From Hyalangium minutum (GTDB lineage: Bacteria > Myxococcota > Myxococcia > Myxococcales > Myxococcaceae), in NCBI RefSeq assembly GCF_000737315.1, contig NZ_JMCB01000002.1, positions 124,001-188,000 on the forward strand: a stretch of 64,000 nt of DNA, written 5' to 3'. Position numbers and translations under genes: made by a program. The first letter of the stretch is position 1. Each line of letters begins with the position of its first letter. This document shows positions 14,331 to 34,514 of the stretch, one piece after another. A model generated the notes under the pieces. The model did not search any database. It had not been told where the DNA came from and saw only the letters and a list, made by a program, of their open reading frames with translations.

Positions 14331-14338
14331 AACGCTCC

Positions 14339-15340
14339 TCACGGCCACGTCCCGACCAGACCCACCATGCCCCCACCGGGGCCCACGGTGACAGTGGGCT
14401 GCACCGGCTTTTCATCTCCAGGGAACAGATAAAACACGCCCGCCGTCACGAGCGCGGCGGCGCCCACTCCAAAGGTGATGCGGCTCAGGTTCTGGGCGCT
14501 GCGCCCATCTCTGGCGAGCTCATCCGGGTTTCGGATGGGGCTGTCGGGGCTGCCGCCCGAGGAAAGCTCGTTGTACTTGCTCCGCGCCTTCAGGAAGAAG
14601 AACGTGCCCGCACCCGCGGAGGCCACGCCCACTGCGGCGGGCGCCCAGGCCCAGCGGCGCAGATTGGCCTTTGGAGCGGGCTTGGCCGGCACGGGCTCCA
14701 CCACCGGAGGCGGCTTCACCAGGGTGTCGCCCGGAGGTGGCTTCACCAGGGTGTCGCCCGGAGGCGGCTCGGTTCCGCCCGTCGGAGTCGAGGGGGTGGT
14801 GTCGGGAGGCGGCTGTGGAACTTCGGGCGGTGCCTGCGAGGGGCGCAGCTGTCGGATCAGCTGCGGTACCACCGCATCCAGGGACTGAGTGAGCGCGTCG
14901 AGCATTCCGTCCTCTCGGACCCCGGGAATGAGGTTCTCGGACACGAGCCCGCCATCGGATGTCTTGTAGATCTTCGTGCCCACGCGGTAGCCGTCCACGC
15001 GTTGCAGCAGCTCGGCCACCAACACCACGTCGCTCTTGGCCGCCTCGCCCAGCGCGGTGAGGCACCGCAGCTCCGTGCGCTTGCACTTCAAGAGCTGGCG
15101 GCGCTTGGCGGAGGACAGCTTGCGCATGAAGTCCTTCATCCGGATCACCGTGAGGCCCTTGGAGCGGGCCTGCTCGGCGACGTGCTCCTGGGCGAACTCC
15201 ACGACGTGCCCCGGCACGCCCGCTGTGTCCGCGGGGGCGATCAGCACGGTGATGGGCCCATCCGCGGCGGCGGGCGCCTGGTTGAGCAGGACGAAGGTGA
15301 GGAGAAGGGGTGTCAGCACGGGGGGTGACTTTCTCCTCAT
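14339..15340 (-). CDS. Hypothetical exported/membrane protein with Pro-rich linker
   Basis: Signal peptide, Pro-rich linker, two hydrophobic segments, GLVGTWP end; 8 nt from the downstream lipoprotein gene. Confidence 0.7.
   Translation of the reverse strand: MRRKSPPVLTPLLLTFVLLNQAPAAADGPITVLIAPADTAGVPGHVVEFAQEHVAEQARSKGLTVIRMKDFMRKLSSAKRRQLLKCKRTELRCLTALGEAAKSDVVLVAELLQRVDGYRVGTKIYKTSDGGLVSENLIPGVREDGMLDALTQSLDAVVPQLIRQLRPSQAPPEVPQPPPDTTPSTPTGGTEPPPGDTLVKPPPGDTLVKPPPVVEPVPAKPAPKANLRRWAWAPAAVGVASAGAGTFFFLKARSKYNELSSGGSPDSPIRNPDELARDGRSAQNLSRITFGVGAAALVTAGVFYLFPGDEKPVQPTVTVGPGGGMVGLVGTWP
14704..14769. repeat. 27-bp tandem repeat (about 2.4 copies) encoding GDTLVKPPP
   Basis: ccggaggcggcttcaccagggtgtcgc / ccggaggtggcttcaccagggtgtcgc / ccggaggcggct. 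Confidence 0.9.
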
Positions 15341-15523
15341 GCTGCCACTCAAGCAAGACTGTGACTGCGCCCCAGGGCTCTCCCGGGCAAAGGCAGGCCC
15401 CAGGGCTGCCGCTCCCCGTTGTGCCCAGCCACTCTCCCTGTCCTGGAGGGCGGTAGGACACTGCCCTACTTATCTCTTGGGTTGGCTTCGCCTGGGAGCG
15501 GGCTTCGGGCCAAAAGGGCCGGT

Positions 15524-17374: not shown

Positions 17375-17451
17375 GGCGGAGCAAGGCTAGCCCGAGCCGC
17401 GCCCTGAACCCAACATCCCGTGGTCGCTTCCCTGCCGAGGGGAGGGGCGGC

Positions 17452-20073: not shown

Positions 20074-20197
20074 TGGTCCTCAGGGGTGGAGAACCCTATC
20101 AGTCGTTATGGAAGCCAGATCGGCCGGATCAGGAGCAACCGTATCGGGAAGCGTGCGATAATCCGTACACTGACTCATTCCAACGAGGTTGCTGTCC

Positions 20198-21226
20198 ATG
20201 TCCATCCGCTCTACGAACTCTTCCGGCTCGGGCCTGATCAATCGTCCTGCTACGCAGGACAAGCCCGCCACCCAGGCTCCCGCGCAGAACACTGTCGCTC
20301 AGCAGAAGTCCTCTGGCCTGCCGGACCGGCTGCAGAGCACGTTCGAGCGGGGCAACGAGATCAACAAGAACTGGAACAAGAGCTACTCCACTGACCGCGC
20401 GATGAACACCCCGAAGCTGCCCTCCAAGGGCCTCGGCGGCGCGCTGGCGGGTCTGCTGGGCAAGCTGCCCAAGTACGAGAAGAGCGGCAGCTTCGAGAAG
20501 AGCGTGGCGTACGCGAAGACCGAGGGCAGCTTCGGCGACCCGAACGGCATCGCGTCCGGCAACTACCGCGCCAGCTTCCTCGAGGCCGGCGTGAACGGCA
20601 GCGGCTCGGTGGCCTTCGAGAACGGCGCCCTCAAGGCGCACGGCGAGGTGCACGCGCAGGCCACGCTGATCGACGCGGCGGCGGACTTCCGCGCCAAGCT
20701 CGGGCCTCTGTCGGCCGAGGGCCAGGGCCACGCGTGGGTGGGCGCCAAGGCGAACGCCTCGGGTGACCTGACCATCGACCCGGTGAACGGCAAGTACGGG
20801 CTCGAGGTGGGCGGCGATGCCTTCGTGGGCGCCAAGGCTGGCGTCGAGGGCAAGGTGAGCCTGGGTGAGTACGGCGGCGTCGGTGGCAAGGCCGAGGCCT
20901 GGGCCGGCGTGGGTGTGTCCGCCAACGCCTCCGTGAAGCTGGAGAACGGCCGCTTCAAGGCGCGCTTCGAGCTGGGCGCGGCGCTCGGCATCGGCTTCAA
21001 GCTGGGCTTCAACGTCGACATCAACTTCAAGAAGATCGGCGACGCGGTCAAGAACGTCTTCAAGAAGCCGGTGGAGTTCGTGAAGAACATCGGCAGCAAG
21101 GTGGGCGAGGTGTTCAAGGGCGCCGCTGACGCCGTGAAGGACGTGGGTAGCAAGATCGCCGACGGCGTGAAGGCCGTGGGCAGCGCGGTGGGCGGCGCGC
21201 TCAAGAAGGTGTTCAGCGGCTGGTAA
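20198..21226 (+). CDS. Hypothetical protein: disordered Ser/Thr/Asn N-terminus, Gly/Ala-rich beta region, amphipathic C-terminal helices
   Basis: GAGG RBS before ATG 20198, strong GC3 codon bias; no Sec signal visible. Confidence 0.75.
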   Translation: MSIRSTNSSGSGLINRPATQDKPATQAPAQNTVAQQKSSGLPDRLQSTFERGNEINKNWNKSYSTDRAMNTPKLPSKGLGGALAGLLGKLPKYEKSGSFEKSVAYAKTEGSFGDPNGIASGNYRASFLEAGVNGSGSVAFENGALKAHGEVHAQATLIDAAADFRAKLGPLSAEGQGHAWVGAKANASGDLTIDPVNGKYGLEVGGDAFVGAKAGVEGKVSLGEYGGVGGKAEAWAGVGVSANASVKLENGRFKARFELGAALGIGFKLGFNVDINFKKIGDAVKNVFKKPVEFVKNIGSKVGEVFKGAADAVKDVGSKIADGVKAVGSAVGGALKKVFSGW

Positions 21227-22522: not shown

Positions 22523-23239
22523 ATGAACAACCCCTCCAGTCGATGGAAGTGGCTGCTGGCGGCAGTGGCGCTGGCGGCCTGCGCGACCACGCCGTTGGGG
22601 AGCGAGGGCCCGGGCTGCGAAGAGGCAGCCGAGGTCGCTCTCTCCGAGGAGGCGTGCGCGGACGAGAGCCGCCTGGTGCCGCTGTGCGCCGGCGAGCAAT
22701 GCGGGCTGTACCGGTGCAGGGAGGTGAAGGAGTTCCTGGTGCTGGGGCGCGTGGTGCTGGCGCGCGGGGCGGCTGCGGTGTTGCCCAACCCCACGGCAGG
22801 AGCCCAGCGCAACTGGGGGAGCGCGCAGGAGTTGCCGCGGGACACGCGGCCTGTGTTCATCATCCCGTGGAGGCACCGGCCGCCGCTGCTGCCCAGTCAG
22901 CAGCAGATGCTGGACGAGGCGGCGAAGGAGCGGAGAAAGCCCCACGAGCAGCACCACATCTTCCCCAGGATGTTCAGGTCCTGGTTTACCCAGCAAGGCA
23001 TCGATATCGACGAGTACGTCATTCTCCTGGAGGTGGAGAAGCATCGGAGCATCCATCGGGGGGCGAACGGTGGACCGTGGAACGATGCCTGGGCTCGGTT
23101 CATCAATAAGCGCAGCAGTGACAGAGTGCCAAAAGAGGAGATCCACAAGTATGCGGGCCAGCTCATCTATGAGTTTGAGCTGTTCGGCCCAGTCATGCGG
23201 TTCAGAAGTCAGTTACCGCCGCTGCCTCTGGGATATTGA
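22523..23239 (+). CDS. sitA6: SitA6-family (TIGR02269/DUF2380) polymorphic toxin lipoprotein, copy 1
   Basis: Lipobox LAAVALAAC, C...C.LYRC motif, GAQRNWG, HHIFP...HRSIH...WNDAW nuclease-like motif; double-CXXCG gene follows. Confidence 0.85.
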   Translation: MNNPSSRWKWLLAAVALAACATTPLGSEGPGCEEAAEVALSEEACADESRLVPLCAGEQCGLYRCREVKEFLVLGRVVLARGAAAVLPNPTAGAQRNWGSAQELPRDTRPVFIIPWRHRPPLLPSQQQMLDEAAKERRKPHEQHHIFPRMFRSWFTQQGIDIDEYVILLEVEKHRSIHRGANGGPWNDAWARFINKRSSDRVPKEEIHKYAGQLIYEFELFGPVMRFRSQLPPLPLGY

Positions 23240-23245
23240 AGTGCC

Positions 23246-23968
23246 ATGCAGTTCTACTGGCTGAAGAGGGTTGAGAATCCGCAGTGCTCGGGTGGATACG
23301 ACTTCGGGCATCAATGGGGCCTGCCCGGGGTTCATTGCCCTATGTGCAACGACACCTGGGCATCCACAGGAGAGACCTATCCGTCGGTGGATCTGTCCCA
23401 GCTGCCTGCCGAGGAGCAGAGGAAATATCTGCCGCGGGTCGAGGAGAACTATGAGGAATTCGAGCGGTTGCGCGAGCAGGTGCGCCCGCTGGTGCCTCCA
23501 GGCGCTCGGCTCTGGCCCGGGACGCAGTTCGGCCCTTTGATTGGCCGAGCCCAGGGGGAGTTTGGCCCGCTGGTGCTGTTCTACGTGTGGGAGCCGTTGA
23601 TGCGGCGCGAGCCCATGGAGCGCTTGCAGGCGGAGGGCCTGAAGGGCTTGAAGGGGTGCCGTACGGCGCTGCGCTTCCGCAAGAAGAACCCGCCGGAGTT
23701 CCTCGAAATGGAGTTGCTGCTTCGGGGCAGACTGCACCCCGGCTGCCTGCCAGAGCTCACTCCTCCTTGTCCTCAATGCAAGGGGGGCAGCGCGAGCTGG
23801 CCGGAGGAGCCTGTCCTGGACGCGTCCACGCTGCCGCAAGACCTGGACCTGTTCCGGCTGGCCGACTTCATGAGGGTCATCGTCACCGAGCGCTTCGTGG
23901 AGGCGGTGCAGCGCCTGAGCTACGCGCAGGACCTCGCCTTCCAGCAACTGCCAGTGCGCGGCGGTTAG
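23246..23968 (+). CDS. sitI6: SitI6-family double-CXXCG immunity protein (TIGR02264), copy 1
   Basis: WGLPGVHCPMC, LRPGT-like LWPGTQFGP, PCPQCKG, DLFRL; 6 nt after the toxin gene. Confidence 0.85.
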   Translation: MQFYWLKRVENPQCSGGYDFGHQWGLPGVHCPMCNDTWASTGETYPSVDLSQLPAEEQRKYLPRVEENYEEFERLREQVRPLVPPGARLWPGTQFGPLIGRAQGEFGPLVLFYVWEPLMRREPMERLQAEGLKGLKGCRTALRFRKKNPPEFLEMELLLRGRLHPGCLPELTPPCPQCKGGSASWPEEPVLDASTLPQDLDLFRLADFMRVIVTERFVEAVQRLSYAQDLAFQQLPVRGG

Positions 23969-24013
23969 CACACGCTTGTCCCCGCACGGGCGTGTGTCTC
24001 GGTGCGCGTCAGG

Positions 24014-25186
24014 TCAGGGCTGTGTGGAAACCTGATCGGGATCAACTCCAGCGTCAGAGTCCGACGCTGCCGCCAGCGGCATGAGCCACTCCCGAGCCAG
24101 ACCGGCGGCCTCGGCCTTGAGCTGGAACACCTCTTCCGCCACGTCCGAGGCCCCTCGATGGCCGAGGGCACGCAGGCGCTGGCGCAGCGCTTGCTCCAGC
24201 TCCGCGGCGCTCGCGTAGCGCTCCGAGGGCTCCGGCCGGAGCAGCTTGTGGAGGATGAAGCGCGTGGGCTCGGGAACCTCGCGGGCGGCCCGCTCCACCT
24301 CGTCGAAGTTCAGGGAGCGGACGCGCTGGAGGAGCTGATCCAGCTCCTGGCCTGCCAGGACGTGCTGGCGTACCCCCAGCTCCTGAACGAACCCCTCCAC
24401 CGCCCCCAGTGCTTCTGGAGGCAGCAGGGCCAGATCCTTGCCCAGCTGCCGCAGGTCCACCTCCTCCTCCCGCCAGAGCAGGTGCTGGCCCGTCAGCAGC
24501 TCCAACAGGATCAGTCCCAGCGCGAAGAGGTCCGAGCGCCCATCCATGGACCGGCGGAGGATCTGCTCGGGCGAGGCATAGACATCGCGCCCGCCCACGC
24601 GGGCCCGCGAGGACGTCTGCCGGCCGCTGAGCTGGGAGCGCGCCAGCCCGAAGTCCAGCAACTTCACCTGCCCCCGCGGGCCGATGCGGATGCGGTCGGG
24701 GTGGAGGCCTCGGTGGATGATGCCCAGTGGTGCTCCCCGCGCATCCGTGAGCGTATGGGCGTGGTGCAGGGCGCTGGCCACCTCGGCGCCCACGTGGAGC
24801 ACGAACGTCTCGGAGCAGTAGCGTCCGCACAGCAACGCGTCGTTGAAGAGCGCGTCCACGGAGTCTCCCTCGACGTACTCCGTGACGGCGTAGAGGGTGC
24901 CCGCGTGCTCGTGCAGCGCGTACAGGCGGGCGATGGCCGGGTGCGAGAGCCGGGTGGCCAGCTGCGCCTCCTCCACCAGCCTCCGGCGCGCCTTGGGTGA
25001 AGCCTCCGCGGCAACGGTCTTGAGCACCACCTGCTCGCCCACCCGGCCCTGGCGGTGGACCCGCGCCAGCAGCAGCCGCTCGCCCCGGGGGCCCTCGCCC
25101 AGCTCCTGGAGGTGCTCATAGCTCACTTCATCCACGCTGAAGAGGAACGCTCCAGGGGCTGTCGCGGCGGGCTTCTTCTTGGACAT
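24014..25186 (-). CDS. Ser/Thr kinase-like protein, probable pseudokinase
   Basis: VVLK, DFG and SPE present, but the catalytic loop reads HRGLHPDRI. Confidence 0.82.
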   Translation of the reverse strand: MSKKKPAATAPGAFLFSVDEVSYEHLQELGEGPRGERLLLARVHRQGRVGEQVVLKTVAAEASPKARRRLVEEAQLATRLSHPAIARLYALHEHAGTLYAVTEYVEGDSVDALFNDALLCGRYCSETFVLHVGAEVASALHHAHTLTDARGAPLGIIHRGLHPDRIRIGPRGQVKLLDFGLARSQLSGRQTSSRARVGGRDVYASPEQILRRSMDGRSDLFALGLILLELLTGQHLLWREEEVDLRQLGKDLALLPPEALGAVEGFVQELGVRQHVLAGQELDQLLQRVRSLNFDEVERAAREVPEPTRFILHKLLRPEPSERYASAAELEQALRQRLRALGHRGASDVAEEVFQLKAEAAGLAREWLMPLAAASDSDAGVDPDQVSTQP

Positions 25187-25303
25187 GGGCAGGCTCCTTC
25201 GCTCGGCGGCGCGGGCGGGAGACTACCGTGGGCGTGCCTCGTGCGCGAGTGACCTGGTGAGTAGGAGCAGGCCTCGCGCTGCGGCGCTCCGTGTCAAGGG
25301 GCT

Positions 25304-27094
25304 TTACAAATCATAGTACTTGAATTGCTGCTCCCACCGTTTGGCCGGACGGCTCTGGAGGAGGTTACGGAGGAAGGGACCGTCATCGGAGCCCTCACGA
25401 TCGTTCTTCCACCGCTCAATGGGCATGGAGATGAAGCAGACCGGCAGCTTGCGGCCATCCGGAAGCTCCGCCTCGGTCCAACGGGCCCACGCGTTCCCTT
25501 GGACTGGAATCCAGAGCCGACCGTGGAGGAGCGTTCCTTTGGGGAGGTCTTCGAGCTGGCTCTTATACACACGGCTGACCACCTCCCCGCTGCGGAGGGC
25601 CACCACATCTTCTGTGTTAGGCCGTGAGGCGTCGAGAAAGACGAGGAACGGGGATCCCGTATCCGGGGCTTCGGCATAGGGGAACCACTGCCGCTCAATC
25701 ATGGCGGCGACAATCTTGGGCGGACAGTCTCCTGGGGGAGGTGTGGCCTGCATGGTGGCGCACGCTGTGTTCATGGCCGCCACGGCAGCGGGGACCAGCA
25801 GGCACCACTCGGGGGAGCCGGGGGCAGGAGCGCGCTTCGCGTCGGGAGAGAGGGTCTGGCGCTTCTTCATGGGAGGATCGTCCTTGCGCGTGGCAGGTGG
25901 GGGCAGGGCGCTGGTGGAGGGGGAAGGTGGCTCAGTGACGGGTGACGAGCCAGGGGCCAGGGAGGCTTTGGAAGCTTCGGAAGGCGGAGGGGACATTGGC
26001 GCCACGGGTCGCATCCAGGAGGAGAGGGAACTGGCGGCCAGCGCCAGGCCTCCGAGGCCCCCCGCCAGGACCGCGCCCCACGCGAGCCTTCGGGGGAGGC
26101 GTGCAAGCTGAGGCGGGCCTGCTTCCGCGGACACGTCTGGCTCTTCGCTCCCGGCCGGTGCTGGCAACAGCGCCTCCCATGCGGCGCTCCCGTCGTCCAG
26201 GCTGCCCAGATCGCGCTCCAGCGCCTCGGCGGTGGCGTGCCGCTGGCGGGGATCCTTGGACAACAGCCGCATCACCGCCTGGCTCAATGTCACGGGCAGG
26301 AAGGGGTGGAGCTCATGCGGTGGTGTGGGGATGCGCAGCTCGATCTCTGCATCGAGGCGCTGGCGCTCGGCGGCGGAGAAGAAGGGGCTCTGGCCGGTCA
26401 GCAACTCGTAGAAGGTGACGCCCAGCGCATAGAGGTCGTCCGCCGGTTGGAACTCGTACCGGGCTTCAGGGTCCTCCGCGTGCAGCCGGGCGAAGTGCAG
26501 GGACTCCGGGCTGCGATAGACAGGCGTGCCTGGCGGAAGGTGCTCCTGGGTGAGCGGCGTGGAGTGCGCATAGTCCCCCGCGCCCCAATCCACGATGACG
26601 GGCTCTCCATTGGGGCGCACGAGGATATTGGCGGGCTTGAGGTCGCGGTGGAAGATGCCCTGCTGGTGCGCAGTGCCGAGCGCATCCGCGAGCGCGATGA
26701 AGAGCCGCAGCGCCTGACGCAGGGTGGGGCGGTGGCGCAGGGCCCACACGCGCAAGGTGTCCCCCTGCACGAACTCCATGACGAGGTAGAAGTACCCATC
26801 CTCCAGATCTGGCCAGCGCCCATGGGCCAGGACCCTGACGATATGGCGGTGCTGGAGCCGGAGCAGACACGCCAGCTCCCGCTTCATCCGGTCGTCGGTA
26901 CGCTTCCTGTCATGAGGTGCGCTGGCCGCCCGGCGCAGGGCGAACTTCAGCGCGTAGCTCCGGCCCTGGCGCGTCGCGAGATAGACGACACCAAAGCCCC
27001 CGCTGGACAGCCGCTGCTCGAGGCGGAAGCTGTCCACCATGGCCCCGGGGCTCAAGAAGCCCGGGTGGATGAGGTGGGGAGGGGACCCCTTCAT
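25304..27094 (-). CDS. Ser/Thr protein kinase with TM segment, Pro-rich linker and C-terminal extracytoplasmic domain
   Basis: SGGFGVVY, YALK, HRDLKPAN, DWG, SPE; TM LAWGAVLAGGLGGLALAA; ATGA overlap with the DUF2381 gene. Confidence 0.9.
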   Translation of the reverse strand: MKGSPPHLIHPGFLSPGAMVDSFRLEQRLSSGGFGVVYLATRQGRSYALKFALRRAASAPHDRKRTDDRMKRELACLLRLQHRHIVRVLAHGRWPDLEDGYFYLVMEFVQGDTLRVWALRHRPTLRQALRLFIALADALGTAHQQGIFHRDLKPANILVRPNGEPVIVDWGAGDYAHSTPLTQEHLPPGTPVYRSPESLHFARLHAEDPEARYEFQPADDLYALGVTFYELLTGQSPFFSAAERQRLDAEIELRIPTPPHELHPFLPVTLSQAVMRLLSKDPRQRHATAEALERDLGSLDDGSAAWEALLPAPAGSEEPDVSAEAGPPQLARLPRRLAWGAVLAGGLGGLALAASSLSSWMRPVAPMSPPPSEASKASLAPGSSPVTEPPSPSTSALPPPATRKDDPPMKKRQTLSPDAKRAPAPGSPEWCLLVPAAVAAMNTACATMQATPPPGDCPPKIVAAMIERQWFPYAEAPDTGSPFLVFLDASRPNTEDVVALRSGEVVSRVYKSQLEDLPKGTLLHGRLWIPVQGNAWARWTEAELPDGRKLPVCFISMPIERWKNDREGSDDGPFLRNLLQSRPAKRWEQQFKYYDL

Positions 27095-28017
27095 GGCGCG
27101 GGCTCAGCGGGGCTCGCGCGATCGTCGCCCGAGAGGCGGGGAAACATGAAAGTCAGGGTCATGGCGGGCTGCTCTTGGGAGGGCACCTTCAGAGACAGAA
27201 TATATTCGCCTCGGGCTGGCGGTTCAGGGCTCAGGACGTCGACCACGACCAGGGCCTCGGGCCGGGGCAGCATGCGCTTCGCGCGCACCCCGCGCACCGT
27301 GAGCTGGTTTGGGGTGGTTGCTGGGGCCGTGAGCGAGGCCTCTTGAAATTCCCAGGGCTGCCCGCTGGGCGGCTGGGGAATGCGCAGGGCAAGCACGAAC
27401 CACCCAGGCCCCGCGTGCACCCACCCGCTGACCTTGAGACTGGAGCGATTCGCGTCCTGGACCTCCGTGATAGTGAGTGGGCTGGTGGAGAGGCCGTGCT
27501 CATCGAGCACACCCGAGACGACAAGGTCCGCCAGGGTGCCCGCCCCTGCCTGAGCCTGGGCCTGGGCGAGCTCCGCCTGGCACGCGGCGAGCGTCTGGAT
27601 GTGCCGGGAGATGTTCACTTGGAGGTCCACCTCGGAGGGCCGCGACACGAGCGCGAGCAGGGCCTCCTGCGGCGTGCTGTCGTCCCGGAAGCGGACGCTG
27701 AGCCACAGCCGTTCATGGGCGTCGAGCTTCACCCGAAGCTGAAGGACGAGAGAGCGCGCGCCGGCATCCACCAGTTGCACGCGCGTGGCATCCAGGACGA
27801 CCGAGTCCTTGTCGATGTCGGCATCGAAGCTCAGCAGGGTGCGCAGGTCTGGTGCCAGGTGGACTTCGGGGACGGGAGCACCTGAGCCCGCCACGGTGAC
27901 ATCGCGCTGTCGCAGGGCGCGAGGGGGCGCAGGTTGGGCTGCGGCGCTGTGGGCGGCCAAGAGAACGGCGAGCATCAACCATCTTGTAGGTAGGGACAGT
28001 GCGAGGTAACCTCCCAC
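27091..28017 (-). CDS. DUF2381 (TIGR02268) family exported protein; start uncertain (ATG 27975 possible)
   Basis: Signal peptide LAVLLAAHSAAA, EVHLAP...LLSFD, LSVRFRD..P, VDLQVNI, short coiled coil; typical position next to a myxobacterial kinase. Confidence 0.75.
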   Translation of the reverse strand: MGGYLALSLPTRWLMLAVLLAAHSAAAQPAPPRALRQRDVTVAGSGAPVPEVHLAPDLRTLLSFDADIDKDSVVLDATRVQLVDAGARSLVLQLRVKLDAHERLWLSVRFRDDSTPQEALLALVSRPSEVDLQVNISRHIQTLAACQAELAQAQAQAGAGTLADLVVSGVLDEHGLSTSPLTITEVQDANRSSLKVSGWVHAGPGWFVLALRIPQPPSGQPWEFQEASLTAPATTPNQLTVRGVRAKRMLPRPEALVVVDVLSPEPPARGEYILSLKVPSQEQPAMTLTFMFPRLSGDDRASPAEPAP

Positions 28018-28109
28018 GTAGGAAAGCTAGCACAGCCTCCGCGCGTCCTGGTCATCGGGGCCAGGGCCTCTCTGCAGGGGGCGCGGTGTACTCACGAGGG
28101 GAGCGATTC

Positions 28110-28457
28110 ATGAACCTGGCGCACTGGTGGGCTTCGCGTTGGACGCAGGTGAGAGGGTTGTTCAACAGCAGGGGTTCCTCGCGGACACCTGTCTCGGCAG
28201 GTTCCGGCGAACCGGGGGGTGAGTCGCGCCCCGGCGAGCTGAAAGAGACCTACGGCCGCATCGCTCGCATCGCGACGCATGCGCGGCCGGACGAAGACCG
28301 GAGGATGCAGCTGTGCCGCTGCTCCGTGTGCGGCGTGGTGAAGCTGTGCACGCCTGACAGTGACTTCTACGCGCAGCATGCGTGGGATCCGCTCATGTGC
28401 CAGGACTGCTTCTTCCAACTGGTGGTGGACGTGCAGTGCCGTGGGGTGAAGGCGTAA
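28110..28457 (+). CDS. Small hypothetical Cys-rich (putative zinc-binding) protein
   Basis: GAGGGGAG RBS before ATG 28110; CRCSVC..C...CQDC motif. Confidence 0.55.
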   Translation: MNLAHWWASRWTQVRGLFNSRGSSRTPVSAGSGEPGGESRPGELKETYGRIARIATHARPDEDRRMQLCRCSVCGVVKLCTPDSDFYAQHAWDPLMCQDCFFQLVVDVQCRGVKA

Positions 28458-28504
28458 GGAAGACTCCGGGGCTCTTGGGGGCGGTGGGATAGGCTCTCGC
28501 TGCG

Positions 28505-29218
28505 ATGAGCGGTGATTTGGCCAAGAGAAAGTGGCTTCTGGCGGCAGTGGCGCTGGCGGCGTGTGCAACGGCACCGCTGGCAAGTGAGGAGCCGGGCTGC
28601 GAGACGGCTGCGGAAGCTGTGCTCGCCGAGGAGGCCTGTGCGAACCCCAGTCGCCTGATAGCGCTGTGCGCTGGCGAGCAGTGCGGGCTGTACCGGTGCG
28701 AGGAGGTGAAGGAGCACCTGGCTCTGGGGCGCGTGGTGCTGGCGCGCGGGGCGGCTGCGGTGTTGCCTAACCCCGCAGCAGGAGCCCAGCGCAATTGGGG
28801 AAGCGCACAGGAATTGCCGCAGGACACGCGGCCTGTGTTCATCATCCCGTGGAGGCACCGGCCGCCGCTGCTGCCCAGTCAGCAGCAGATGCTGGACGAG
28901 GCGGCGAAGGAGCGGAGAAAGCCCCACGGGCAGCACCACATCTTCCCCAGGATGTTCAAGGGATGGTTCACTGAAAAAGGCATCAACATTGACGAGTACG
29001 TCATCCTCCTGGGGGTGGAGAAACACCGGAGCATCCACCGGGGAGCTAAAGGGGGCCCGTGGAATGACGCATGGGATAGGTTCATCCAAGCGAGGAGGGC
29101 AACGGCGACGAGAGAGGAGATCCACAAATACGCGGGCCAGCTCATTTACGAGTTCGAGCTGTTCGGCCCGGTCATGCGGTTTAAGAGCCCGCCACCTCCA
29201 CTGCCTCCAGGGTATTGA
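28505..29218 (+). CDS. sitA6: SitA6-family polymorphic toxin lipoprotein, copy 2
   Basis: Same lipobox and HHIFP motif as copy 1; near-identical N-terminal and middle sequence. Confidence 0.85.
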   Translation: MSGDLAKRKWLLAAVALAACATAPLASEEPGCETAAEAVLAEEACANPSRLIALCAGEQCGLYRCEEVKEHLALGRVVLARGAAAVLPNPAAGAQRNWGSAQELPQDTRPVFIIPWRHRPPLLPSQQQMLDEAAKERRKPHGQHHIFPRMFKGWFTEKGINIDEYVILLGVEKHRSIHRGAKGGPWNDAWDRFIQARRATATREEIHKYAGQLIYEFELFGPVMRFKSPPPPLPPGY

Positions 29219-29224
29219 GCAAAC

Positions 29225-29944
29225 ATGAGGTTCTACCTGCTGGATGGTGTCCCGGACCCAAAGTACTCGGGCGGGTACGACTACGGGCACCAATGGGGAC
29301 TGCCCGGGGTGCAATGCTCGGTCTGCAAGGCCACGTGGTCCTCCACGGGAGGTGCCTACCCCTCGGTGGATCTGTCTTATCTTCCGCCCGAGGAGCAAAA
29401 GAAGTACTTGCCGCGAGTCGAGGAGAACTACGAGGAGTTTAAGCGGCTGAAGGAGCAGGTGCGCCCGCTGGTACCTGCCGGTGTACCCCTTTGGCCAGGG
29501 ACCAAGTTTGGTCCCATGAATGGCCGGGCCTGGGGGGAGTTTGGCCCGCTGGTCTTGGCTCACGCGTGGGAGCTGTTGGTGCGGCGCGAGCCTCTGGAGC
29601 GGCTGCAGGCGGAGGGTTTGAGGGGCTTGAAGGGCTGCCGAACGGCGCTGCGCTTTCGCAAGAAGAACCCACCAGAACTGCTGGAGATGGAGCTGCTGCC
29701 CCGGGGCGCGCTTCACCCAGACTGTTTGCCGGAACGCCCCCCGCCTTGTCCCCAATGCGAGCGGGATGGCTTCGATTGGCCGGAGAAACCCCTGCTGAAC
29801 GCGGCCACACTGCCAGAGGACCTGGATGTGTTCCGGTTGGCCAACTTCATGACGATGATCATCGGTACCGAGCGCTTCGTGGAGGCGGTGCGGCGCTTGG
29901 GCTACGAGCAGGACATCGCCTTCAGGGAACTGCCAGCCCGCTGA
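29225..29944 (+). CDS. sitI6: SitI6-family double-CXXCG immunity protein, copy 2
   Basis: WGLPGVQCSVC, LWPGTKFGP, PCPQCER, DVFRL. Confidence 0.85.
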   Translation: MRFYLLDGVPDPKYSGGYDYGHQWGLPGVQCSVCKATWSSTGGAYPSVDLSYLPPEEQKKYLPRVEENYEEFKRLKEQVRPLVPAGVPLWPGTKFGPMNGRAWGEFGPLVLAHAWELLVRREPLERLQAEGLRGLKGCRTALRFRKKNPPELLEMELLPRGALHPDCLPERPPPCPQCERDGFDWPEKPLLNAATLPEDLDVFRLANFMTMIIGTERFVEAVRRLGYEQDIAFRELPAR

Positions 29945-30845: not shown

Positions 30846-33800
30846 GTGAGTTCGTATGCTCACGGCGTGAGTCCGACGAGTTCCATGCATCCGGAGTACG
30901 AGGACGAGCTGCACCTCGCCCTGGTGGAGGGAGTGCTGTCCCGGGATCAGGTCGAGCCCCTGCGCGCGGAGGTGGTTCGCCTGGGCCGGAGCCCTCTGGA
31001 CCTGTTGATGGAGCGCGGCCAGCTCTCCCCCGAGACGCTCTCCTCCCTGCGAGGCGAGCTCCACCGCCAGGCCCCACCCGCCGTTGCGGGCCAGCCGCAG
31101 GAGCCCGCCACCCAGAAGCCCGGAGCTGCTTCCCAGGCGGACTCCTCCTCCGAGCCCGTCTTCCCCCTGCGGAACTGGGACCGCTACCAGCCCGTGCGCT
31201 TCCTGGGGCAGGGCGGCATGGGCCAGGTGTTCCTCGCGTACGACCCGCGCCTGCGCCGCAACGTGGCCATCAAGTTCGTGCGCGAGGGCAGCCCCGAGCT
31301 CGCCCAGCGCTTCCTCTCCGAGGCCCGCGCCCAGGCCCGCGTCCAGCACCAGCGCGTCTGTGAGATGTACGAGGTCGGCGAGGCTCAGAGCCGCGCGTAC
31401 ATCGCCATGCAGTACGTGGAGGGGCGCTCGCTCGGCCAGCTCGCGCCCGAGCTCACGCTGGAGCAGAAGATCCTCGTGATGCGCGATGTCTGCGAGGGTG
31501 TGCACGCCGCTCACCGTGCGGGGCTGATTCACCGCGACCTGAAGCCCTCCAACGTCCTGGTAGAGCGCACCGAGGACGGAGGCCTCAAGCCCTACGTCAT
31601 GGACTTCGGCCTCGCGCGGGACTGGCAGGGCGAGAACACCGCCACGGGCTCGGTGCTGGGCACTCCCCACTACATGGCGCCCGAGCAGGCCCGGGGCGAG
31701 GTGTCCCAGCTGGACCGGCGCGTGGACGTCTACAGCCTGGGCGCCACACTCTACCAAGTGCTCACGGGCCAGCCTCCCTTCGCTGGCCTCAACGCCCTGG
31801 AGATCGTGAGCCGGATCCAGACCGAGGAGCCGCCGTCTCCGCGCACGCTCGTGCCGGATCTGCCGGTCGACCTGGAGGCCATCGTCCTCAAGTGCCTCGA
31901 GAAGGACCGCGCGGCGCGGTACGACTCGGCGCGCGCCCTGGCCGAGGACTTGGAGCGGTTCCTCTCAGGCGAGCCCGTCCTGGCGAGTTCCGCGGGGCCG
32001 CTGTACCGGCTGCGCAAGAAGGTCCGCAAGCACCGCGTCCTGGTGGCTGTCGGCACCGCGGCCACGCTGGTGCTGGGCGTCGCCGTGGGACAGGCCGCCC
32101 TGGCCCGCCGCGAGGTGGTGGAGCGTGAGCGCCTCTCCCGCAGCTTCACCGAGAGGGTGGAGCGCATCGAGGCCATGTCCCGCTACTCCTCCATGGCGCC
32201 GCTGCACGACACCACCGCCGACCGTCAGGCCATCCGCCAGCAGATGGAGGAACTGGAGGCCGAGGTCCACGCGGGCGGCGCTCAGGCCGAGGGGCCCGGC
32301 GACTACGCCGTGGGCCGTGCACTCTTCGCGCTCGGGGATGCCGAGGGGGCGCGCACCCAGCTCGAGGCCGCATGGCAGAGTGGCTTCCGCGAGGCGCGCG
32401 TGGCCTATGCCCTGGCGCTGGCGCTTGGGCAGCTCTACCAGGAGCAGCTCCTGGAGGTGGAGCGCCTGCGCAGTGCCCCGCAGCGCGAGGCCCGCCGCCG
32501 CGAGCTCGAGCAGCGCTACCGCGATCCCGCCCTCGGCTACTTGAAGCAGAGCGTGCAGAGCGGTGGCGCGGAGGTTCCCTCCACCGAGTACGTCACGGCG
32601 CTCATGGCCTTCTACGAGGGCCGCTACGAGGACGCCCTGACGCACCTGGAGAAGATGGGCACCCTCAACCCCTGGTTCTACGAAGCGCCCCTGCTCCGTG
32701 GGGACATCCTCCAGGCCCGTGCCAGCCGCAGGTTGTACCAGGGTGACCGCGCCGGAGCGCTGTCTGATCTGGAGACGGCCGGGCAGGCCCAGGCCCTTGC
32801 CGCCGACATCGGCGAGAGCGAGTTCGCCGTCTACCACGCCATGGCGCGGCTGCAGCTCACCGCGCTGACCCTGGAGCTCTACGGCCAGGGCGAGGTGCGG
32901 CCTCATTATGAGAAGGGCCTGGAAGCGCTCTCCCGCGCGCTCACCGTCATACCGGATCACTTCAAAGCCCGGCTGCTGGAGTCCCGCCTCCACCGCCGGA
33001 TGGTGGATCAGCTGACGCAGCAAGGCGCCGAGGTGTTGCCGCTGCTGGAGAAGGCCCTCGCCGCCTCACGCACCGCCGCGGCGCTCGCGCCCAGCCAACC
33101 GCAGGTCCACACCGAGCTGGCTTTCGTCTTCCGCCGCTGGGCGCTCTACCGCCAGAGCCGGGGCGAGGATCCGTCCGAGCAGCTGCGCGAGGCCGCCGCA
33201 GCCCTCGAGCGCATCCGCCCGGAAGAGCGGAACTCCTCGTTCCACAGCGAGATGGGGAACATCTTCAAGGTGTGGGCCGACGCCGAGGAGCAATCCGGCA
33301 AGGACTCCCTCGAGCACCGCGGACAGGCCATCGACGCATACCGTGCGGCCCTCCAGCTGGATGCGAGCCAGGCAGAGACCTGGAGCAGCCTGGGTACCGC
33401 CTACTTCAAGCGGGGCACGAGCCCGCACCCCCGTGATGCCGATGGCGACCTGGAGCAGGCCTGGACCGCGCTCGAGCGTGCGCAGAGCATCGACCCGGGC
33501 AACTACGTCCACTACTTCTATGGAGGGCAGGTGCAGGAGTGGCGGGCCCGCCGGAAGTACAACCGTGGCCGCGGAGTGGAGCCGGAGCTGGAGCAGGCCC
33601 TGGCGCAGTACCGCAAGGGGCTGGCCATCAACAGCAAGCTGCCTCAGTTCCACAACCTCCTGGGCGGAGCGCTGCTGTGGAGGGCGGAGCTGACGTGGGA
33701 AGAGGGCGGTGACGCCTCCCTGTGGCTCGATCAGGCCCAGCCCGCCTTCGAGCAAGCCCGCACCGTGGCCCCTCAGCAGGCCTTCGCGTACAACGGATTG

Positions 33801-34514
33801 GGCGAGGTGCATGCGTGGCGGGCGTTGTTCCAGCTCCGCGCGAAGCAGGATCCCCTCCCCAGTGGCCGCGCGGCCCTCGAGGCCTACCAACAGGCCCTCG
33901 ACCGGGCTCCTCGCAACGCGCAGTCCTGGACCAACATGGCCAAGGTCCGTGTCTCCCTGGCCCTCTGGGCGCTGGAGCAAGGCAGAGACCCTGGGCCCGA
34001 GCTCGATCGGGCCACGGAGGCGCTGCGCCAGGCGCTCAGCATCAACCCGCGCATGGCGAACGCCCTGCGCTACCAGGGCGAGACACTCGGAATCCGTGCG
34101 CGCTGGCTGGCGCGCCAGGGCCAAGGGCGCCAGGGGGACTTCGAAGCCGCCGCCACCGCCCTCCAGCAGGCCATTGGCGCGGATCCCGAATGGCAGGAGT
34201 ACCGCCTCTCCGCGGCCATGCTCCACCGCGAGTGGGGGAAATGGCTGGCGGCCACGGGGAGCGATCCCACCCCGGTGCTGAGGCAGGGGCTGGCCTGGAT
34301 CGACGAGTCGCTGGCTTCCCGTCCCAAGTGGGCCCACGCCCGAGCTGTCCGGGCCCGCCTGCTTCTGGCGCTGGCGGAGACCTCGGTGGAGCCTCCGCAG
34401 CAGCAGGCCTGGAAGAGCGAGGCCCGGAAGGAGCTGGAACAGGCGCTCGCCAGCAATCCCCACCTCGTGAGCGAGTGGGGCCAGAGCCTCGTCTCACGAG
34501 GTCTCACGCCCTAG
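30846..34514 (+). CDS. Membrane Ser/Thr protein kinase with large extracytoplasmic TPR region (start may be ATG 30885)
   Basis: GQGGMGQVF, VAIK, HRDLKPSN, DFG, APE; TM VLVAVGTAATLVLGVAVG; many TPR helices. Confidence 0.92.
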   Translation: MSSYAHGVSPTSSMHPEYEDELHLALVEGVLSRDQVEPLRAEVVRLGRSPLDLLMERGQLSPETLSSLRGELHRQAPPAVAGQPQEPATQKPGAASQADSSSEPVFPLRNWDRYQPVRFLGQGGMGQVFLAYDPRLRRNVAIKFVREGSPELAQRFLSEARAQARVQHQRVCEMYEVGEAQSRAYIAMQYVEGRSLGQLAPELTLEQKILVMRDVCEGVHAAHRAGLIHRDLKPSNVLVERTEDGGLKPYVMDFGLARDWQGENTATGSVLGTPHYMAPEQARGEVSQLDRRVDVYSLGATLYQVLTGQPPFAGLNALEIVSRIQTEEPPSPRTLVPDLPVDLEAIVLKCLEKDRAARYDSARALAEDLERFLSGEPVLASSAGPLYRLRKKVRKHRVLVAVGTAATLVLGVAVGQAALARREVVERERLSRSFTERVERIEAMSRYSSMAPLHDTTADRQAIRQQMEELEAEVHAGGAQAEGPGDYAVGRALFALGDAEGARTQLEAAWQSGFREARVAYALALALGQLYQEQLLEVERLRSAPQREARRRELEQRYRDPALGYLKQSVQSGGAEVPSTEYVTALMAFYEGRYEDALTHLEKMGTLNPWFYEAPLLRGDILQARASRRLYQGDRAGALSDLETAGQAQALAADIGESEFAVYHAMARLQLTALTLELYGQGEVRPHYEKGLEALSRALTVIPDHFKARLLESRLHRRMVDQLTQQGAEVLPLLEKALAASRTAAALAPSQPQVHTELAFVFRRWALYRQSRGEDPSEQLREAAAALERIRPEERNSSFHSEMGNIFKVWADAEEQSGKDSLEHRGQAIDAYRAALQLDASQAETWSSLGTAYFKRGTSPHPRDADGDLEQAWTALERAQSIDPGNYVHYFYGGQVQEWRARRKYNRGRGVEPELEQALAQYRKGLAINSKLPQFHNLLGGALLWRAELTWEEGGDASLWLDQAQPAFEQARTVAPQQAFAYNGLGEVHAWRALFQLRAKQDPLPSGRAALEAYQQALDRAPRNAQSWTNMAKVRVSLALWALEQGRDPGPELDRATEALRQALSINPRMANALRYQGETLGIRARWLARQGQGRQGDFEAAATALQQAIGADPEWQEYRLSAAMLHREWGKWLAATGSDPTPVLRQGLAWIDESLASRPKWAHARAVRARLLLALAETSVEPPQQQAWKSEARKELEQALASNPHLVSEWGQSLVSRGLTP

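What the first reader, a model, noticed from the sequence alone, without database searches (positions are those of the whole stretch)
24014..28017. DUF2381 plus kinase C-terminus look like a VirB9/VirB10 (type IV secretion core) pair wired to a kinase
Seen: the kinase has cytoplasmic domain - TM - Pro-rich linker - C-terminal domain with LPKGTLLHGRL...AWARWTEAELPDGRKLPV (nt ~25437-25550); DUF2381 has a signal peptide, EVHLAP..LLSFD beta domain, coiled linker and second beta domain; the genes overlap (ATGA). Known: VirB10/TrbI has TM - Pro-rich linker - a domain with IPxGxxLxG...RxxxxWxxxxxPxGxxxxL, and VirB9 is a two-domain periplasmic partner. Inference from remembered motifs only: a minimal envelope-spanning core complex with a kinase in place of the ATPases, embedded in a toxin locus.
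Basis: inference. Interest (0 to 1): 0.7.

Follow-up and report, generated by a model that had tools for sequence, protein, structure and literature searches.

The report
VirB9/VirB10-like pair fused to kinase
A myxobacterial two-gene cassette encodes a secreted protein and a membrane Ser/Thr kinase whose periplasmic parts fold like VirB9 and VirB10, the core pair of type IV secretion machines, yet it lacks the rest of that machine and so looks like secretion hardware reused for signalling.

Summary
DUF2381 (27091-28017, -) overlaps by ATGA a 596-aa Ser/Thr kinase (25304-27094, -) built as kinase, TM helix, Pro-rich linker and a ~140-aa C-terminal domain (CTD). A pseudokinase follows, and SitA6/SitI6 toxin-immunity pairs flank the cassette.

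For the AlphaFold CTD model, the 12 best PDB matches are all VirB10 family (TrwE, Xanthomonas VirB10, CagY, ComB10). For the DUF2381 model, the five best are DotH, VirB9 and TrwF (E down to 6e-9). Profile-profile comparison is weak but specific (44-52% and 21% for cognate pairs, under 1% when swapped).

DUF2381 and the CTD are adjacent in every locus with enough sequence to judge, even where the CTD is a stand-alone lipoprotein-like gene without a kinase. Nothing else is conserved. There is no other T4SS gene, and the CTD lacks the VirB10 antenna helices.

I read it as a T4SS-core-derived periplasmic module that controls a Hanks kinase, not a channel. Complex formation and the signal are untested. 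I found no prior description.

The parts
27091..28017 (-). DUF2381/TIGR02268 gene (308 aa from GTG 28017; the database gene call starts at the ATG 14 codons downstream, 294 aa). Secreted VirB9-like protein.
   Evidence: Pfam PF09544 119 bits and TIGR02268 160 bits. Best PDB fold matches are DotH, Xanthomonas VirB9 and TrwF.
27934..28017 (-). Signal-peptide-like N-terminus of DUF2381 (residues ~1-28, ...LLAAHSAAA|QP). No lipobox cysteine.
   Evidence: Hydropathy peak and the sequence itself. Low pLDDT in the model.
27604..27918 (-). DUF2381 N-terminal beta-sandwich domain (residues 34-138), VirB9-NTD-like.
   Evidence: AlphaFold strands. Fold matches: 7mue_AH (DotH NTD) TMt 0.60, 7o3t_B (TrwF NTD) TMt 0.62, 8rt6_v TMt 0.67 at rmsd 3.0. 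hhalign to a VirB9 profile covers this domain.
27514..27591 (-). Helical linker of DUF2381 (residues 143-168).
   Evidence: AlphaFold secondary structure.
27145..27486 (-). DUF2381 C-terminal beta domain (residues 178-291).
   Evidence: AlphaFold model. The full-length alignments to DotH (291 columns), VirB9 and TrwF span both domains.
27091..27094 (-). ATGA: the DUF2381 stop overlaps the K1 start (translational coupling likely).
   Evidence: Sequence. virB9 and virB10 of pTiC58 also overlap by 4 nt.
25304..27094 (-). K1: 596-aa bitopic Hanks-type Ser/Thr kinase with a VirB10-like topology and C-terminal domain.
26195..27031 (-). K1 kinase domain (residues ~22-300). Motifs present: GxGxxG-like loop, VAIK Lys, HRDLKPAN, DWG in place of DFG, SPE. 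Probably active.
   Evidence: Pfam Pkinase 124 bits; alignment of the window's kinases.
26018..26086 (-). K1 transmembrane helix (residues ~337-359), preceded by RLPRR.
   Evidence: Hydropathy and the sequence.
25811..26017 (-). Pro/Ser/Ala-rich periplasmic linker (residues ~360-428). Contains Met409 with an AAGGA 10 nt upstream.
   Evidence: Sequence.
25724..25810 (-). Conserved 'neck' (residues ~429-457): short hydrophobic stretch plus Cys motif C-x12-[LA]x[GA]C-x(2-4)-QVRPxPxxCP. In stand-alone forms it reads as a lipoprotein signal peptide with a lipobox.
   Evidence: Alignment of about 70 family members. C25, C37 and C133 of the CTD construct are invariant or nearly so.
25325..25735 (-). 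K1 C-terminal beta domain (residues ~454-590): VirB10-CTD-like barrel without the antenna helices.
   Evidence: AlphaFold pLDDT 83.8. The 12 best PDB matches are all VirB10 family, with chain identities confirmed. hhalign versus VirB10 profile: P=1.4e-4.
25439..25546 (-). It is the only stretch with detectable sequence similarity to VirB10 (LiexGtxxxGey...RvFvxWxrlxtPxgvxI).
24014..25186 (-). K2: 390-aa soluble kinase-like protein, 117 nt downstream of K1. HRG-L-HPDR replaces HRD-L-KxxN and the Gly loop is degenerate, so it is a predicted pseudokinase. It is not conserved with the cassette elsewhere.
   Evidence: Pfam Pkinase 99.7 bits; alignment; absent next to the other cassettes.
22541..23968 (+). 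SitA6-family lipoprotein toxin plus SitI6 immunity gene (left flank, convergent with K2). Context, not part of the conserved module.
   Evidence: TIGR02269 and TIGR02264 above cut-off. 80.7% nt identity to the right-hand copy.
28505..29944 (+). Second SitA6/SitI6 pair (right flank, divergent from DUF2381). Context.
   Evidence: The same arrangement occurs in the orthologous Hyalangium locus L001.

Best explanation
The conserved unit is a two-gene cassette.

Its first product, DUF2381, is a secreted two-domain beta protein that is a remote structural homologue of VirB9/DotH. Its second product is a bitopic Hanks-type Ser/Thr kinase. Everything in that kinase beyond the kinase domain copies VirB10: one TM helix, a Pro-rich periplasmic linker and a C-terminal beta-barrel-like domain. 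The copy is truncated and lacks the antenna that forms the outer-membrane pore in real T4SS.

Shown:
- the folds and the topology;
- the ATGA coupling;
- the invariable adjacency of the two genes across paralogues and genera;
- split and kinase-less versions of the pair;
- the absence of all other T4SS parts.

Inferred: as in the T4SS core complex, the VirB10-like domain (and perhaps the conserved Cys-rich neck before it) binds the VirB9-like protein in the periplasm. The assembly state or conformation of that complex is transmitted through the single TM helix to the cytoplasmic kinase domains. Clustering would favour trans-autophosphorylation, with the downstream pseudokinase K2 as a lineage-specific partner or substrate.

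So this is T4SS core hardware exapted as the extracytoplasmic sensor and scaffold of a eukaryotic-like kinase. It is not a secretion channel. The input signal is unknown. An envelope or cell-contact cue is the most plausible, given the frequent neighbouring toxin/immunity genes and the reported link of M. xanthus STPK-DUF2381 clusters to phase variation and sporulation bias.
For: Fold of the kinase CTD:
- AlphaFold model pLDDT 83.8.
- Foldseek PDB ranks 1-12 are all VirB10 family: 6gyb_C E=1.3e-3 TMq 0.41, then TrwE, CagY and ComB10, with prob 0.95-1.00. The next hits have prob <=0.15. Chain identities were confirmed by sequence.

Fold of DUF2381:
- AlphaFold model pLDDT 83.8.
- Top five hits are 7muc_AH E=5.8e-9, 6gyb_B 3.4e-7, 8rt6_B 1e-6, 7mue_AH 2.6e-6 and 7o3t_B 8e-4.
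- These chains are VirB9 and TrwF. 7muc_AH and 7mue_AH are DotH by residue count (PMC8486379).

Sequence level:
- hhalign CTD vs VirB10: Prob 44-52%, P=1.4-2.4e-4.
- hhalign DUF2381 vs VirB9: Prob 21%, P=1e-3.
- Swapped controls: Prob 0.6% and 0.1%.
- Pfam TrbI and Transposon_TraM are the only families hit by more than one of 44 CTD members.

Association:
- DUF2381 is immediately followed by a kinase gene in all 11 fused loci (L001-L010, L030). The CTD is present in all 10 whose contig reaches the 3' end. No other gene family is shared among them.
- The stand-alone CTD is still adjacent to DUF2381 in L024, L025 and L027/L028.
- Pairwise divergence of DUF2381 tracks the CTD (r=0.98) slightly better than it tracks the kinase domain (r=0.95).

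Other:
- K1 has intact catalytic motifs and K2 lacks them.
- Invariant cysteines in the CTD fit an oxidising, periplasmic location.
- Literature: STPK/DUF2381 clusters in M. xanthus are regulated in phase variation, and insertions in them are enriched in spores (PMC3986340; bioRxiv 10.64898/2026.08.28.747804).
Against: - Sequence-level support is below any conventional threshold. There is no Pfam TrbI or CagX hit for the window's own proteins, and PDB sequence-profile searches found nothing.
- CTD TM-scores are only 0.36-0.41 and E-values 1e-3 to 1e-1. Part of the hhalign match for DUF2381 covers the signal peptide.
- No interface or oligomer was modelled. The mirror-tree correlation is expected for co-duplicated neighbours anyway.
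- Kinase-less pairs show the module has a function of its own that is not signalling through a fused kinase.
- The hydrophobic, lipobox-like neck after a TM helix is topologically odd and unexplained.
- No signal, substrate or phenotype is known for this locus.
Confidence: 0.55

Rival explanations
1. One reading: the pair assembles into a ring-shaped, envelope-spanning core complex (a minimal conduit). The kinase domain replaces the T4SS ATPases as the cytoplasmic energiser or gate. The conduit would possibly serve traffic of the neighbouring lipoprotein toxins.
For: - Both core-complex folds are present, in the VirB9-then-VirB10 gene order and with a VirB10-like topology.
- VirB10 is known to couple cytoplasmic ATP use to outer-membrane gating (established T4SS knowledge).
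- Toxin/immunity genes lie next to the cassette in 5 of about 13 independent loci.
- How SitA toxins cross the envelope is unresolved, and no envelope factor was found for SitA6, possibly because of redundancy (PMC8546572).
Against: - The CTD stops where the VirB10 antenna helices begin, and the model has no helix pair. There is therefore no known way to span the outer membrane.
- No VirB4/6/7/8/11 or coupling protein is conserved with the pair.
- Kinase-less versions exist.
- Most cassettes have ordinary metabolic neighbours.
- A protein kinase is not a mechanical ATPase.
Confidence: 0.12
2. Envelope-attack (danger) sensor. The periplasmic VirB9/VirB10-like complex detects incoming toxins or membrane perturbation during outer-membrane exchange or T6SS attack. 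It signals through the kinase to defence or immunity functions, in analogy to TagQRST-PpkA of Pseudomonas.
For: - Immunity genes (TsiV, Imm11, SitI3, SitI6) recur directly beside the cassettes. In L002 and L030 they lie on the same strand just downstream of the kinase.
- The periplasmic partner evolves faster than the kinase domain: 61% vs 82% identity between orthologues.
- The family is massively expanded into paralogues, as recognition modules often are.
Against: - sitAI loci alone number 25-80 per myxobacterial genome (PMC8546572), so adjacency may only reflect shared residence in variable islands. No background frequency was computed.
- Roughly half of the loci examined show no toxin or immunity neighbour.
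- There are no expression or phenotype data linking the two.
Confidence: 0.15
3. The resemblance is convergent or generic. DUF2381 is just a two-Ig-like-domain periplasmic protein and the CTD a small beta domain. They act as an ordinary ligand-binding co-receptor pair with no evolutionary link to T4SS.
For: - Beta-sandwich folds are common, and many Ig-like proteins appear in the DUF2381 hit list from E=1e-3.
- CTD TM-scores are below 0.5.
- Sequence profiles give under 55% probability.
- No PDB sequence hit.
Against: - Two different folds, encoded by adjacent translationally coupled genes, each retrieve as their best matches the two partners of one known complex.
- VirB9-family hits are 3-6 orders of magnitude better than the generic Ig hits and cover both domains.
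- The 12 best CTD hits are exclusively VirB10.
- Cognate profile pairs score far above swapped pairs.
- The TM plus Pro-rich linker plus CTD topology also matches VirB10.
Confidence: 0.15

Closest known systems
VirB10/TrbI/TrwE/CagY/ComB10 (T4SS core, Pfam PF03743)
   Same: - N-in bitopic topology with one TM helix, a Pro-rich periplasmic linker and a C-terminal beta-barrel-type domain.
- Shared motif (L-x-x-G-T-x-x-x-G ... R-x-x-x-x-W-x-x-x-x-x-P-x-G).
- Encoded immediately after, and overlapping, the VirB9-like gene.
   Different: - The cytoplasmic part is a 330-aa Hanks kinase instead of a short tail.
- The CTD is about 140 aa instead of about 200, and lacks the antenna helices and the last part of the barrel.
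- A Cys-rich, lipobox-like neck is present.
- No Pfam-level match.
- No T4SS context.
- Dozens of paralogues per genome.
VirB9/TrbG/TrwF/CagX/DotH (T4SS core)
   Same: - Signal peptide followed by two beta-sandwich domains joined by a linker.
- Best fold matches over both domains.
- Gene order and coupling with the VirB10-like gene.
   Different: - No significant sequence-profile match (Prob 21%).
- The linker is a helical hairpin.
- No VirB7-type lipoprotein gene is conserved nearby.
- Restricted to Myxococcota among the named hits.
PpkA with TagQ/TagR/TagS/TagT (threonine phosphorylation pathway of the Pseudomonas aeruginosa H1-T6SS)
   Same: From established knowledge: a bitopic Hanks kinase whose periplasmic domain works with a separate periplasmic or outer-membrane partner to report envelope events. 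This is a functional analogy for how the cassette may work.
   Different: No homology of the periplasmic parts (PpkA has a vWA domain). No T6SS genes here. Analogy only, not tested.
M. xanthus STPK / 'PKc-like' / DUF2381 clusters (MXAN_1233-4, 2176-7, 3182-3, 4840-1; MXAN_4374)
   Same: Same gene families (DUF2381/TIGR02268 next to Ser/Thr kinases of about 596 aa). They are reported as phase-variation-regulated, and insertions in them are enriched in spores (PMC3986340; bioRxiv 10.64898/2026.08.28.747804).
   Different: Those papers treat them as kinase clusters of unknown mechanism. They do not mention a VirB9/VirB10 relationship. Orthology to the window's cassette was not established here.

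Membership tests
VirB10/TrbI family | C-terminal domain with the VirB10 beta-barrel fold | tested here: met
   Foldseek PDB: ranks 1-12 are all VirB10-family chains, prob 0.95-1.00, E 1.3e-3 to 0.11, TMq 0.36-0.41. Chain identities confirmed. The match is moderate, not strong.
VirB10/TrbI family | Significant match to the family's sequence profile (Pfam PF03743 gathering score) | tested here: not met
   No TrbI hit for K1. Only 2 of 44 CTD homologues reach E=0.028. hhalign against a 12-sequence VirB10 profile gives Prob 44-52% over 40 columns.
VirB10/TrbI family | N-in single TM helix followed by a Pro-rich periplasmic region | tested here: met
   Hydropathy peak at residues 337-359 preceded by RLPRR, then a linker of about 70 aa rich in Pro/Ser. 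The topology itself was not tested experimentally.
VirB10/TrbI family | Antenna projection (helix-loop-helix that forms the outer-membrane pore) | tested here: not met
   The model has no helix pair after residue 47 of the CTD construct. The extended hhalign alignment ends at the VirB10 'VDxHFxxRFGGA' start of the antenna, leaving more than 60 template columns unmatched.
VirB10/TrbI family | Encoded in a T4SS gene cluster (VirB4, VirB6, VirB8, VirB11, coupling protein) | tested here: not met
   No such Pfam families in the genes scanned between 3 and 42945, which include all near neighbours. No third conserved gene in 10 related loci. The only secretion-type ATPase (15527-17386) is 6.6 kb away and is not conserved with the cassette.
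VirB9/TrbG/CagX/DotH family | Secreted protein with two beta-sandwich domains matching the VirB9 NTD and CTD | tested here: met
   Model with two beta domains. DotH E=5.8e-9 over 291 columns, Xanthomonas VirB9 3.4e-7, TrwF 1e-6. Single-domain matches TMt 0.60-0.67 at rmsd 3.0-4.5.
VirB9/TrbG/CagX/DotH family | Significant sequence-profile match (Pfam CagX/VirB9) | tested here: not met
   No Pfam hit other than DUF2381. hhalign Prob 21%, P=1e-3. A small VirB9 HMM scores over 5 bits on 20 of 122 DUF2381 proteins versus 0 of 122 reversed decoys. DotH itself also fails this test against VirB9 (PMC8486379).
VirB9/TrbG/CagX/DotH family | Physical complex with the VirB10 partner | not testable with these tools
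   No multimer prediction was available. The evidence is indirect only: ATGA coupling, adjacency in every related locus with enough sequence to judge, and correlated divergence r=0.98.
DUF2381 / TIGR02268 | Score above the curated cut-offs | tested here: met
   PF09544 119.3 bits (cut-off 29.2); TIGR02268 160.4 bits (cut-off 76.15).
Hanks-type Ser/Thr protein kinase (active) | Gly loop, VAIK Lys, HRD-x-K-x-x-N catalytic loop, DFG, APE | tested here: met
   K1: SGGFGVV, ALKF, HRDLKPAN, DWG, SPE; Pkinase 123.8 bits. K2 fails, with HRGLHPDR and a degenerate Gly loop, and is a predicted pseudokinase.
Known anti-phage defence kinases (PADLOC PD-T4-6, MADS mad6) | Full-length match including the non-kinase parts and the partner genes | tested here: not met
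   The hits cover only the kinase domain of K1 and K2. DUF2381 has no PADLOC hit. The NCBIfam MAD6 score of 141 is far below the cut-off of 460.

The most novel reading that the evidence does not exclude
The VirB9-like/VirB10-like pair is an autonomous outer-membrane-associated periplasmic ring descended from a T4SS core. Myxobacteria have multiplied it into dozens of variants and use it at the interface with outer-membrane-exchange toxins, either as family-specific entry or retention stations for lipoprotein toxins or as their detectors. The kinase-fused versions report engagement to the cytoplasm. The conserved lipobox-like neck (and possibly an internal start at Met409) would give a lipid-anchored form.
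Probability: 0.1. Interest if true: 0.9.

Novelty: new variant of a known kind. Interest (0 to 1): 0.72.

Why it matters
VirB9 and VirB10 are known only as parts of type IV secretion, conjugation and DNA-uptake machines.

A free-standing VirB9/VirB10-like pair would be a clear case of secretion-machine parts exapted for signalling. Here the pair has lost the pore-forming antenna, has multiplied into many paralogues per genome and is usually fused to a eukaryotic-like kinase.

It would matter in three ways:
- It would give DUF2381 and a whole class of myxobacterial kinases a structural rationale.
- It suggests a testable mechanism for the STPK-DUF2381 clusters already linked to phase variation and sporulation bias in M. 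xanthus.
- It opens a possible link to the unresolved question of how outer-membrane-exchange toxins are handled in the envelope.

Tried and rejected
**Sequence searches against solved structures**
- Direct sequence and profile searches of both proteins against PDB sequences found nothing relevant.
- Profile versus a single VirB9 or VirB10 sequence gave Prob <=4%. I therefore built 12-member VirB9 and VirB10 alignments from plasmid T4SS loci.
- A small local VirB10-CTD HMM scored at most 3.9 bits on CTD family members. That is better than reversed decoys and always on the same motif, but not significant.

**Homologue searches**
- The word-indexed homologue search found only one CTD relative. 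The exhaustive representative search was needed to find 110 clusters.

**Other T4SS parts**
- None found.
- The TadA/VirB11-like ATPase at 15527-17386 was considered and rejected as a component. It is separated from the cassette by six unrelated genes and is absent from the other cassettes.

**Defence-system membership**
- Rejected. PADLOC hits cover the kinase domain only.

**Operon signals**
- The promoter/terminator scan of 23900-28600 was uninformative.

**Context look-ups**
- Two DUF2381 proteins (Corallococcus, Melittangium) were not on record.
- L026 and L029 are too short to show what lies upstream of the CTD.

**Literature**
- Searches for DUF2381, TIGR02268, and VirB9/VirB10 with Myxococcus or kinases found no description of this relationship.

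Full report
**What is in the window**

The window is about 69% G+C. The closest related loci come from Hyalangium, Archangium and Cystobacter. L001, from a Hyalangium MAG, is syntenic with the window. The source is therefore an Archangiaceae-type myxobacterium.

Three genes lie on the minus strand of the finding:
- DUF2381, 27091-28017, 308 aa.
- K1, 25304-27094, 596 aa.
- K2, 24014-25186, 390 aa.

DUF2381 passes the curated cut-offs of PF09544 and TIGR02268. K1 and K2 have protein-kinase domains.

The DUF2381 stop and the K1 start overlap as ATGA. K2 follows after 117 nt.

K1 has one strongly hydrophobic helix (about 337-359) after an RLPRR cluster, then a linker of about 70 residues rich in Pro/Ser, then a C-terminal region.

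SitA6-family lipoprotein toxin and SitI6 immunity genes flank the three genes on both sides. The two pairs are 80.7% identical direct repeats.

**The kinases**

K1 keeps the catalytic signature: VAIK Lys, HRDLKPAN, DWG for DFG, SPE. K2 has HRGLHPDR and a degenerate glycine loop, so it lacks the catalytic Asp and Asn and is a predicted pseudokinase.

PADLOC and NCBIfam hits to defence kinases cover only the kinase domains and fall far below family cut-offs.

**The C-terminal domain of K1 is a family of its own**

It has no Pfam or NCBIfam model. The word-indexed search found a single relative. An exhaustive HMMER search of 1.84 billion representatives found 110 clusters.

In all of them the domain is at the very C-terminus. 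In 44 clusters it sits on a protein longer than 400 aa, mostly about 600 aa.

An alignment of 44 members (A2) shows invariant or near-invariant cysteines. It also shows the consensus ...GC.G.QVRP.P..CP...G.LP.GTLL.G.LW....GRYTEA.LP.G...PVC.

**Test of the VirB10 idea**

AlphaFold2 on A2 gave a confident model: pLDDT 83.8, with one helix followed by eight strands.

Foldseek against the PDB returned VirB10-family chains as ranks 1-12:
- Xanthomonas VirB10 (6gyb_C, E=1.3e-3, TMq 0.41).
- R388 TrwE (7o3j_A, 8rt6_A).
- CagY (6x6s, 6x6k, 6odi, 8cb2).
- ComB10 (2bhv).

These have probabilities 0.95-1.00. Rank 13 onward drops to 0.15 or less. A VirB10 sequence profile confirmed what these chains are.

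At sequence level:
- Pfam TrbI and Transposon_TraM are the only families hit by more than one of the 44 members, two each at E about 0.02-0.03. That the Bacteroidetes TraM is a VirB10 counterpart is my own knowledge.
- I built VirB9 and VirB10 alignments from 12 diverse plasmid T4SS loci.
- hhalign of the CTD profile against VirB10 gave Prob 44-52%, P=1.4-2.4e-4.
- The swapped control (CTD versus VirB9) gave Prob 0.6%.

An extended alignment shows the CTD ending where the VirB10 antenna begins. The model has no helix pair there.

The domain is therefore VirB10-like in fold and topology, but it is shorter and lacks the outer-membrane-spanning element. It does not meet the family's sequence threshold.

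**Test of the VirB9 idea**

A profile search gave 159 DUF2381 proteins. Every one that carries an organism name is from a myxobacterium, several from the same genome.

AlphaFold2 on a 122-sequence alignment (A4) gave pLDDT 83.8, with two beta domains (34-138 and 178-291) joined by helices.

The five best Foldseek PDB hits are:
- 7muc_AH, E=5.8e-9, 291 columns.
- 6gyb_B, 3.4e-7.
- 8rt6_B, 1e-6.
- 7mue_AH, 2.6e-6, TMt 0.60.
- 7o3t_B, 8e-4, TMt 0.62.

CagX (6x6j_AX) and a TrwF domain (8rt6_v, TMt 0.67, rmsd 3.0) follow further down. Generic Ig-like proteins start only at E about 1e-3.

A VirB9 profile identifies 6gyb_b as VirB9 and assigns 7o3t and 8rt6 to TrwF. The two Legionella chains have exactly the residue counts of DotH 104-361 and DotH 104-263. 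[quoted passage not shown]

hhalign of DUF2381 against VirB9 gave Prob 21%, P=1e-3 over the N-terminal domain, partly over the signal peptide. The swapped control gave 0.1%. A small VirB9 HMM scores over 5 bits on 20 of 122 DUF2381 proteins and on none of their reversed decoys.

The fold evidence is strong. The sequence evidence is weak, as it also is for DotH.

**The pair is the conserved unit**

Eleven related loci carry the kinase-fused form (L001-L010 and L030). In each, DUF2381 is followed directly by a kinase gene. The CTD is found on that kinase in all 10 loci whose contig reaches its 3' end. Clustering all plausible genes of ten loci found no other shared family.

Three further loci show the domain as a separate gene, with an N-terminus that reads as a lipoprotein signal peptide:
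- L024: CTD then DUF2381.
- L025: K1-like kinase with TM helix, then CTD, then DUF2381 as three ORFs.
- L027/L028: DUF2381 then CTD, with no kinase at all.

These split and kinase-less forms argue that the two periplasmic proteins work together, and that the kinase is a frequent but dispensable addition.

In the fused proteins the same hydrophobic-plus-lipobox 'neck' is retained after the TM helix and linker. I cannot explain its role there.

Pairwise identities of DUF2381 correlate with those of the CTD (r=0.98) a little better than with the kinase domain (r=0.95). Between the window and its orthologue, DUF2381 is 61% identical while the kinase domain is 82%. Both results are compatible with a co-evolving periplasmic pair. 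Neither is proof.

**What it is not**

None of the genes scanned across the first 43 kb of the window is a T4SS component. The one exception is a TadA/VirB11-family ATPase at 15527-17386. Six unrelated genes separate it from the cassette, and it is absent next to the other cassettes.

No VirB7-like gene is conserved. Without an antenna, inner-membrane channel parts or ATPases, a secretion function is unlikely.

**Most likely mechanism**

I infer that K1 sits in the inner membrane like VirB10, and that its periplasmic domain binds the secreted VirB9-like DUF2381. Assembly or a conformational change of this complex would regulate the cytoplasmic kinase. K2 would be a local pseudokinase partner.

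The folds, topology, coupling and co-occurrence are shown. The interaction, the oligomeric state, the direction of signalling and the signal itself are inferred.

PpkA with TagQRST in Pseudomonas is the nearest functional analogy (my knowledge, not tested).

The M. xanthus literature links STPK/DUF2381 clusters to phase variation and sporulation bias, without a mechanism.

**Toxin context**

Toxin or immunity genes sit beside the cassette in the window and L001 (SitAI6), L002 and L030 (TsiV), L025 (CXXCG and Imm11) and L027/L028 (CdiA_C lipoprotein toxin plus SitI3).

That is about 5 of 13 independent loci. However, sitAI loci alone number 25-80 per genome (PMC8546572), and I could not compute a background. 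I treat this as a lead, not a finding.

**Novelty**

Full-text searches found no paper relating DUF2381 or these kinases to VirB9/VirB10.

The component families are known. The relationship, the fusion to a Hanks kinase and the T4SS-independent expansion appear new. I rate it a new variant of a known kind, with interest 0.72.

The main uncertainties are the modest CTD fold scores and the untested interface.

Noticed in passing
window 15527-17386 (-), with 14339-15352 (-) and 12702-14348 (-): A TadA/VirB11-family secretion ATPase (NCBIfam TadA 271 bits, VirB11 216 bits, both below cut-off) carries an extra C-terminal region of about 320 aa. Downstream of it lie a signal-peptide/TM protein and a very Gly-rich lipoprotein, neither with a family match. 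It is not conserved next to DUF2381 cassettes elsewhere.
   Followed up: partly
window 22541-23968 (+) and 28505-29944 (+): Two sitA6-sitI6 toxin-immunity pairs, 80.7% identical at DNA level, form direct repeats around the kinase cassette. The region has lower third-position G+C than its surroundings, as a variable island would. The orthologous Hyalangium locus L001 has sitA6 plus two sitI6 genes on the same side.
   Followed up: partly
L002:7167-10191, L030:8520-9557, L025:1-895 and 4444-5485, L027:2935-4791: Immunity or toxin genes lie directly beside DUF2381+CTD cassettes in other genomes: TsiV (twice in L002, once in L030), a CXXCG/SitI6-like gene and Imm11 (L025), and a CdiA_C lipoprotein toxin plus SitI3 (L027). 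No background frequency was computed, so enrichment is unproven.
   Followed up: partly
L024:235-1768, L025:1601-4401, L027:1259-2734: The VirB10-like domain also occurs as a stand-alone gene of 160-180 aa with a lipoprotein-type signal peptide, still adjacent to DUF2381. It is found in either gene order, and with a separate kinase or with no kinase at all.
   Followed up: yes
window 25868-25870 (- strand ATG, K1 Met409) and upstream AAGGA: An in-frame Met with a Shine-Dalgarno-like AAGGA 10 nt upstream sits just before the K/R cluster, hydrophobic stretch and lipobox-like Cys of the neck. A database protein (P0001, 184 aa, 73% identical) begins exactly there. An internal start giving a free lipoprotein CTD is possible but untested.
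   Followed up: no
window 20189-21226 (+): A 345-aa Gly/Ala/Lys-rich protein has no match in Pfam, NCBIfam or PADLOC. It lies just upstream of a TPR protein and the left sitA6 gene.
   Followed up: no
window 1698-5009 (+), 10500-12677 (-), 30846-34514 (+): Three more Ser/Thr kinases are in the window: one fused to MshEN and receiver domains, one of 725 aa, and one of 1222 aa with a long TPR-like C-terminus. This density is usual for myxobacteria.
   Followed up: no
L012:2120-2123 (pTiC58 virB9/virB10): By annotation coordinates, the genuine virB9 and virB10 genes of the Agrobacterium Ti plasmid also overlap by 4 nt. This is the same coupling as DUF2381/K1.
   Followed up: no
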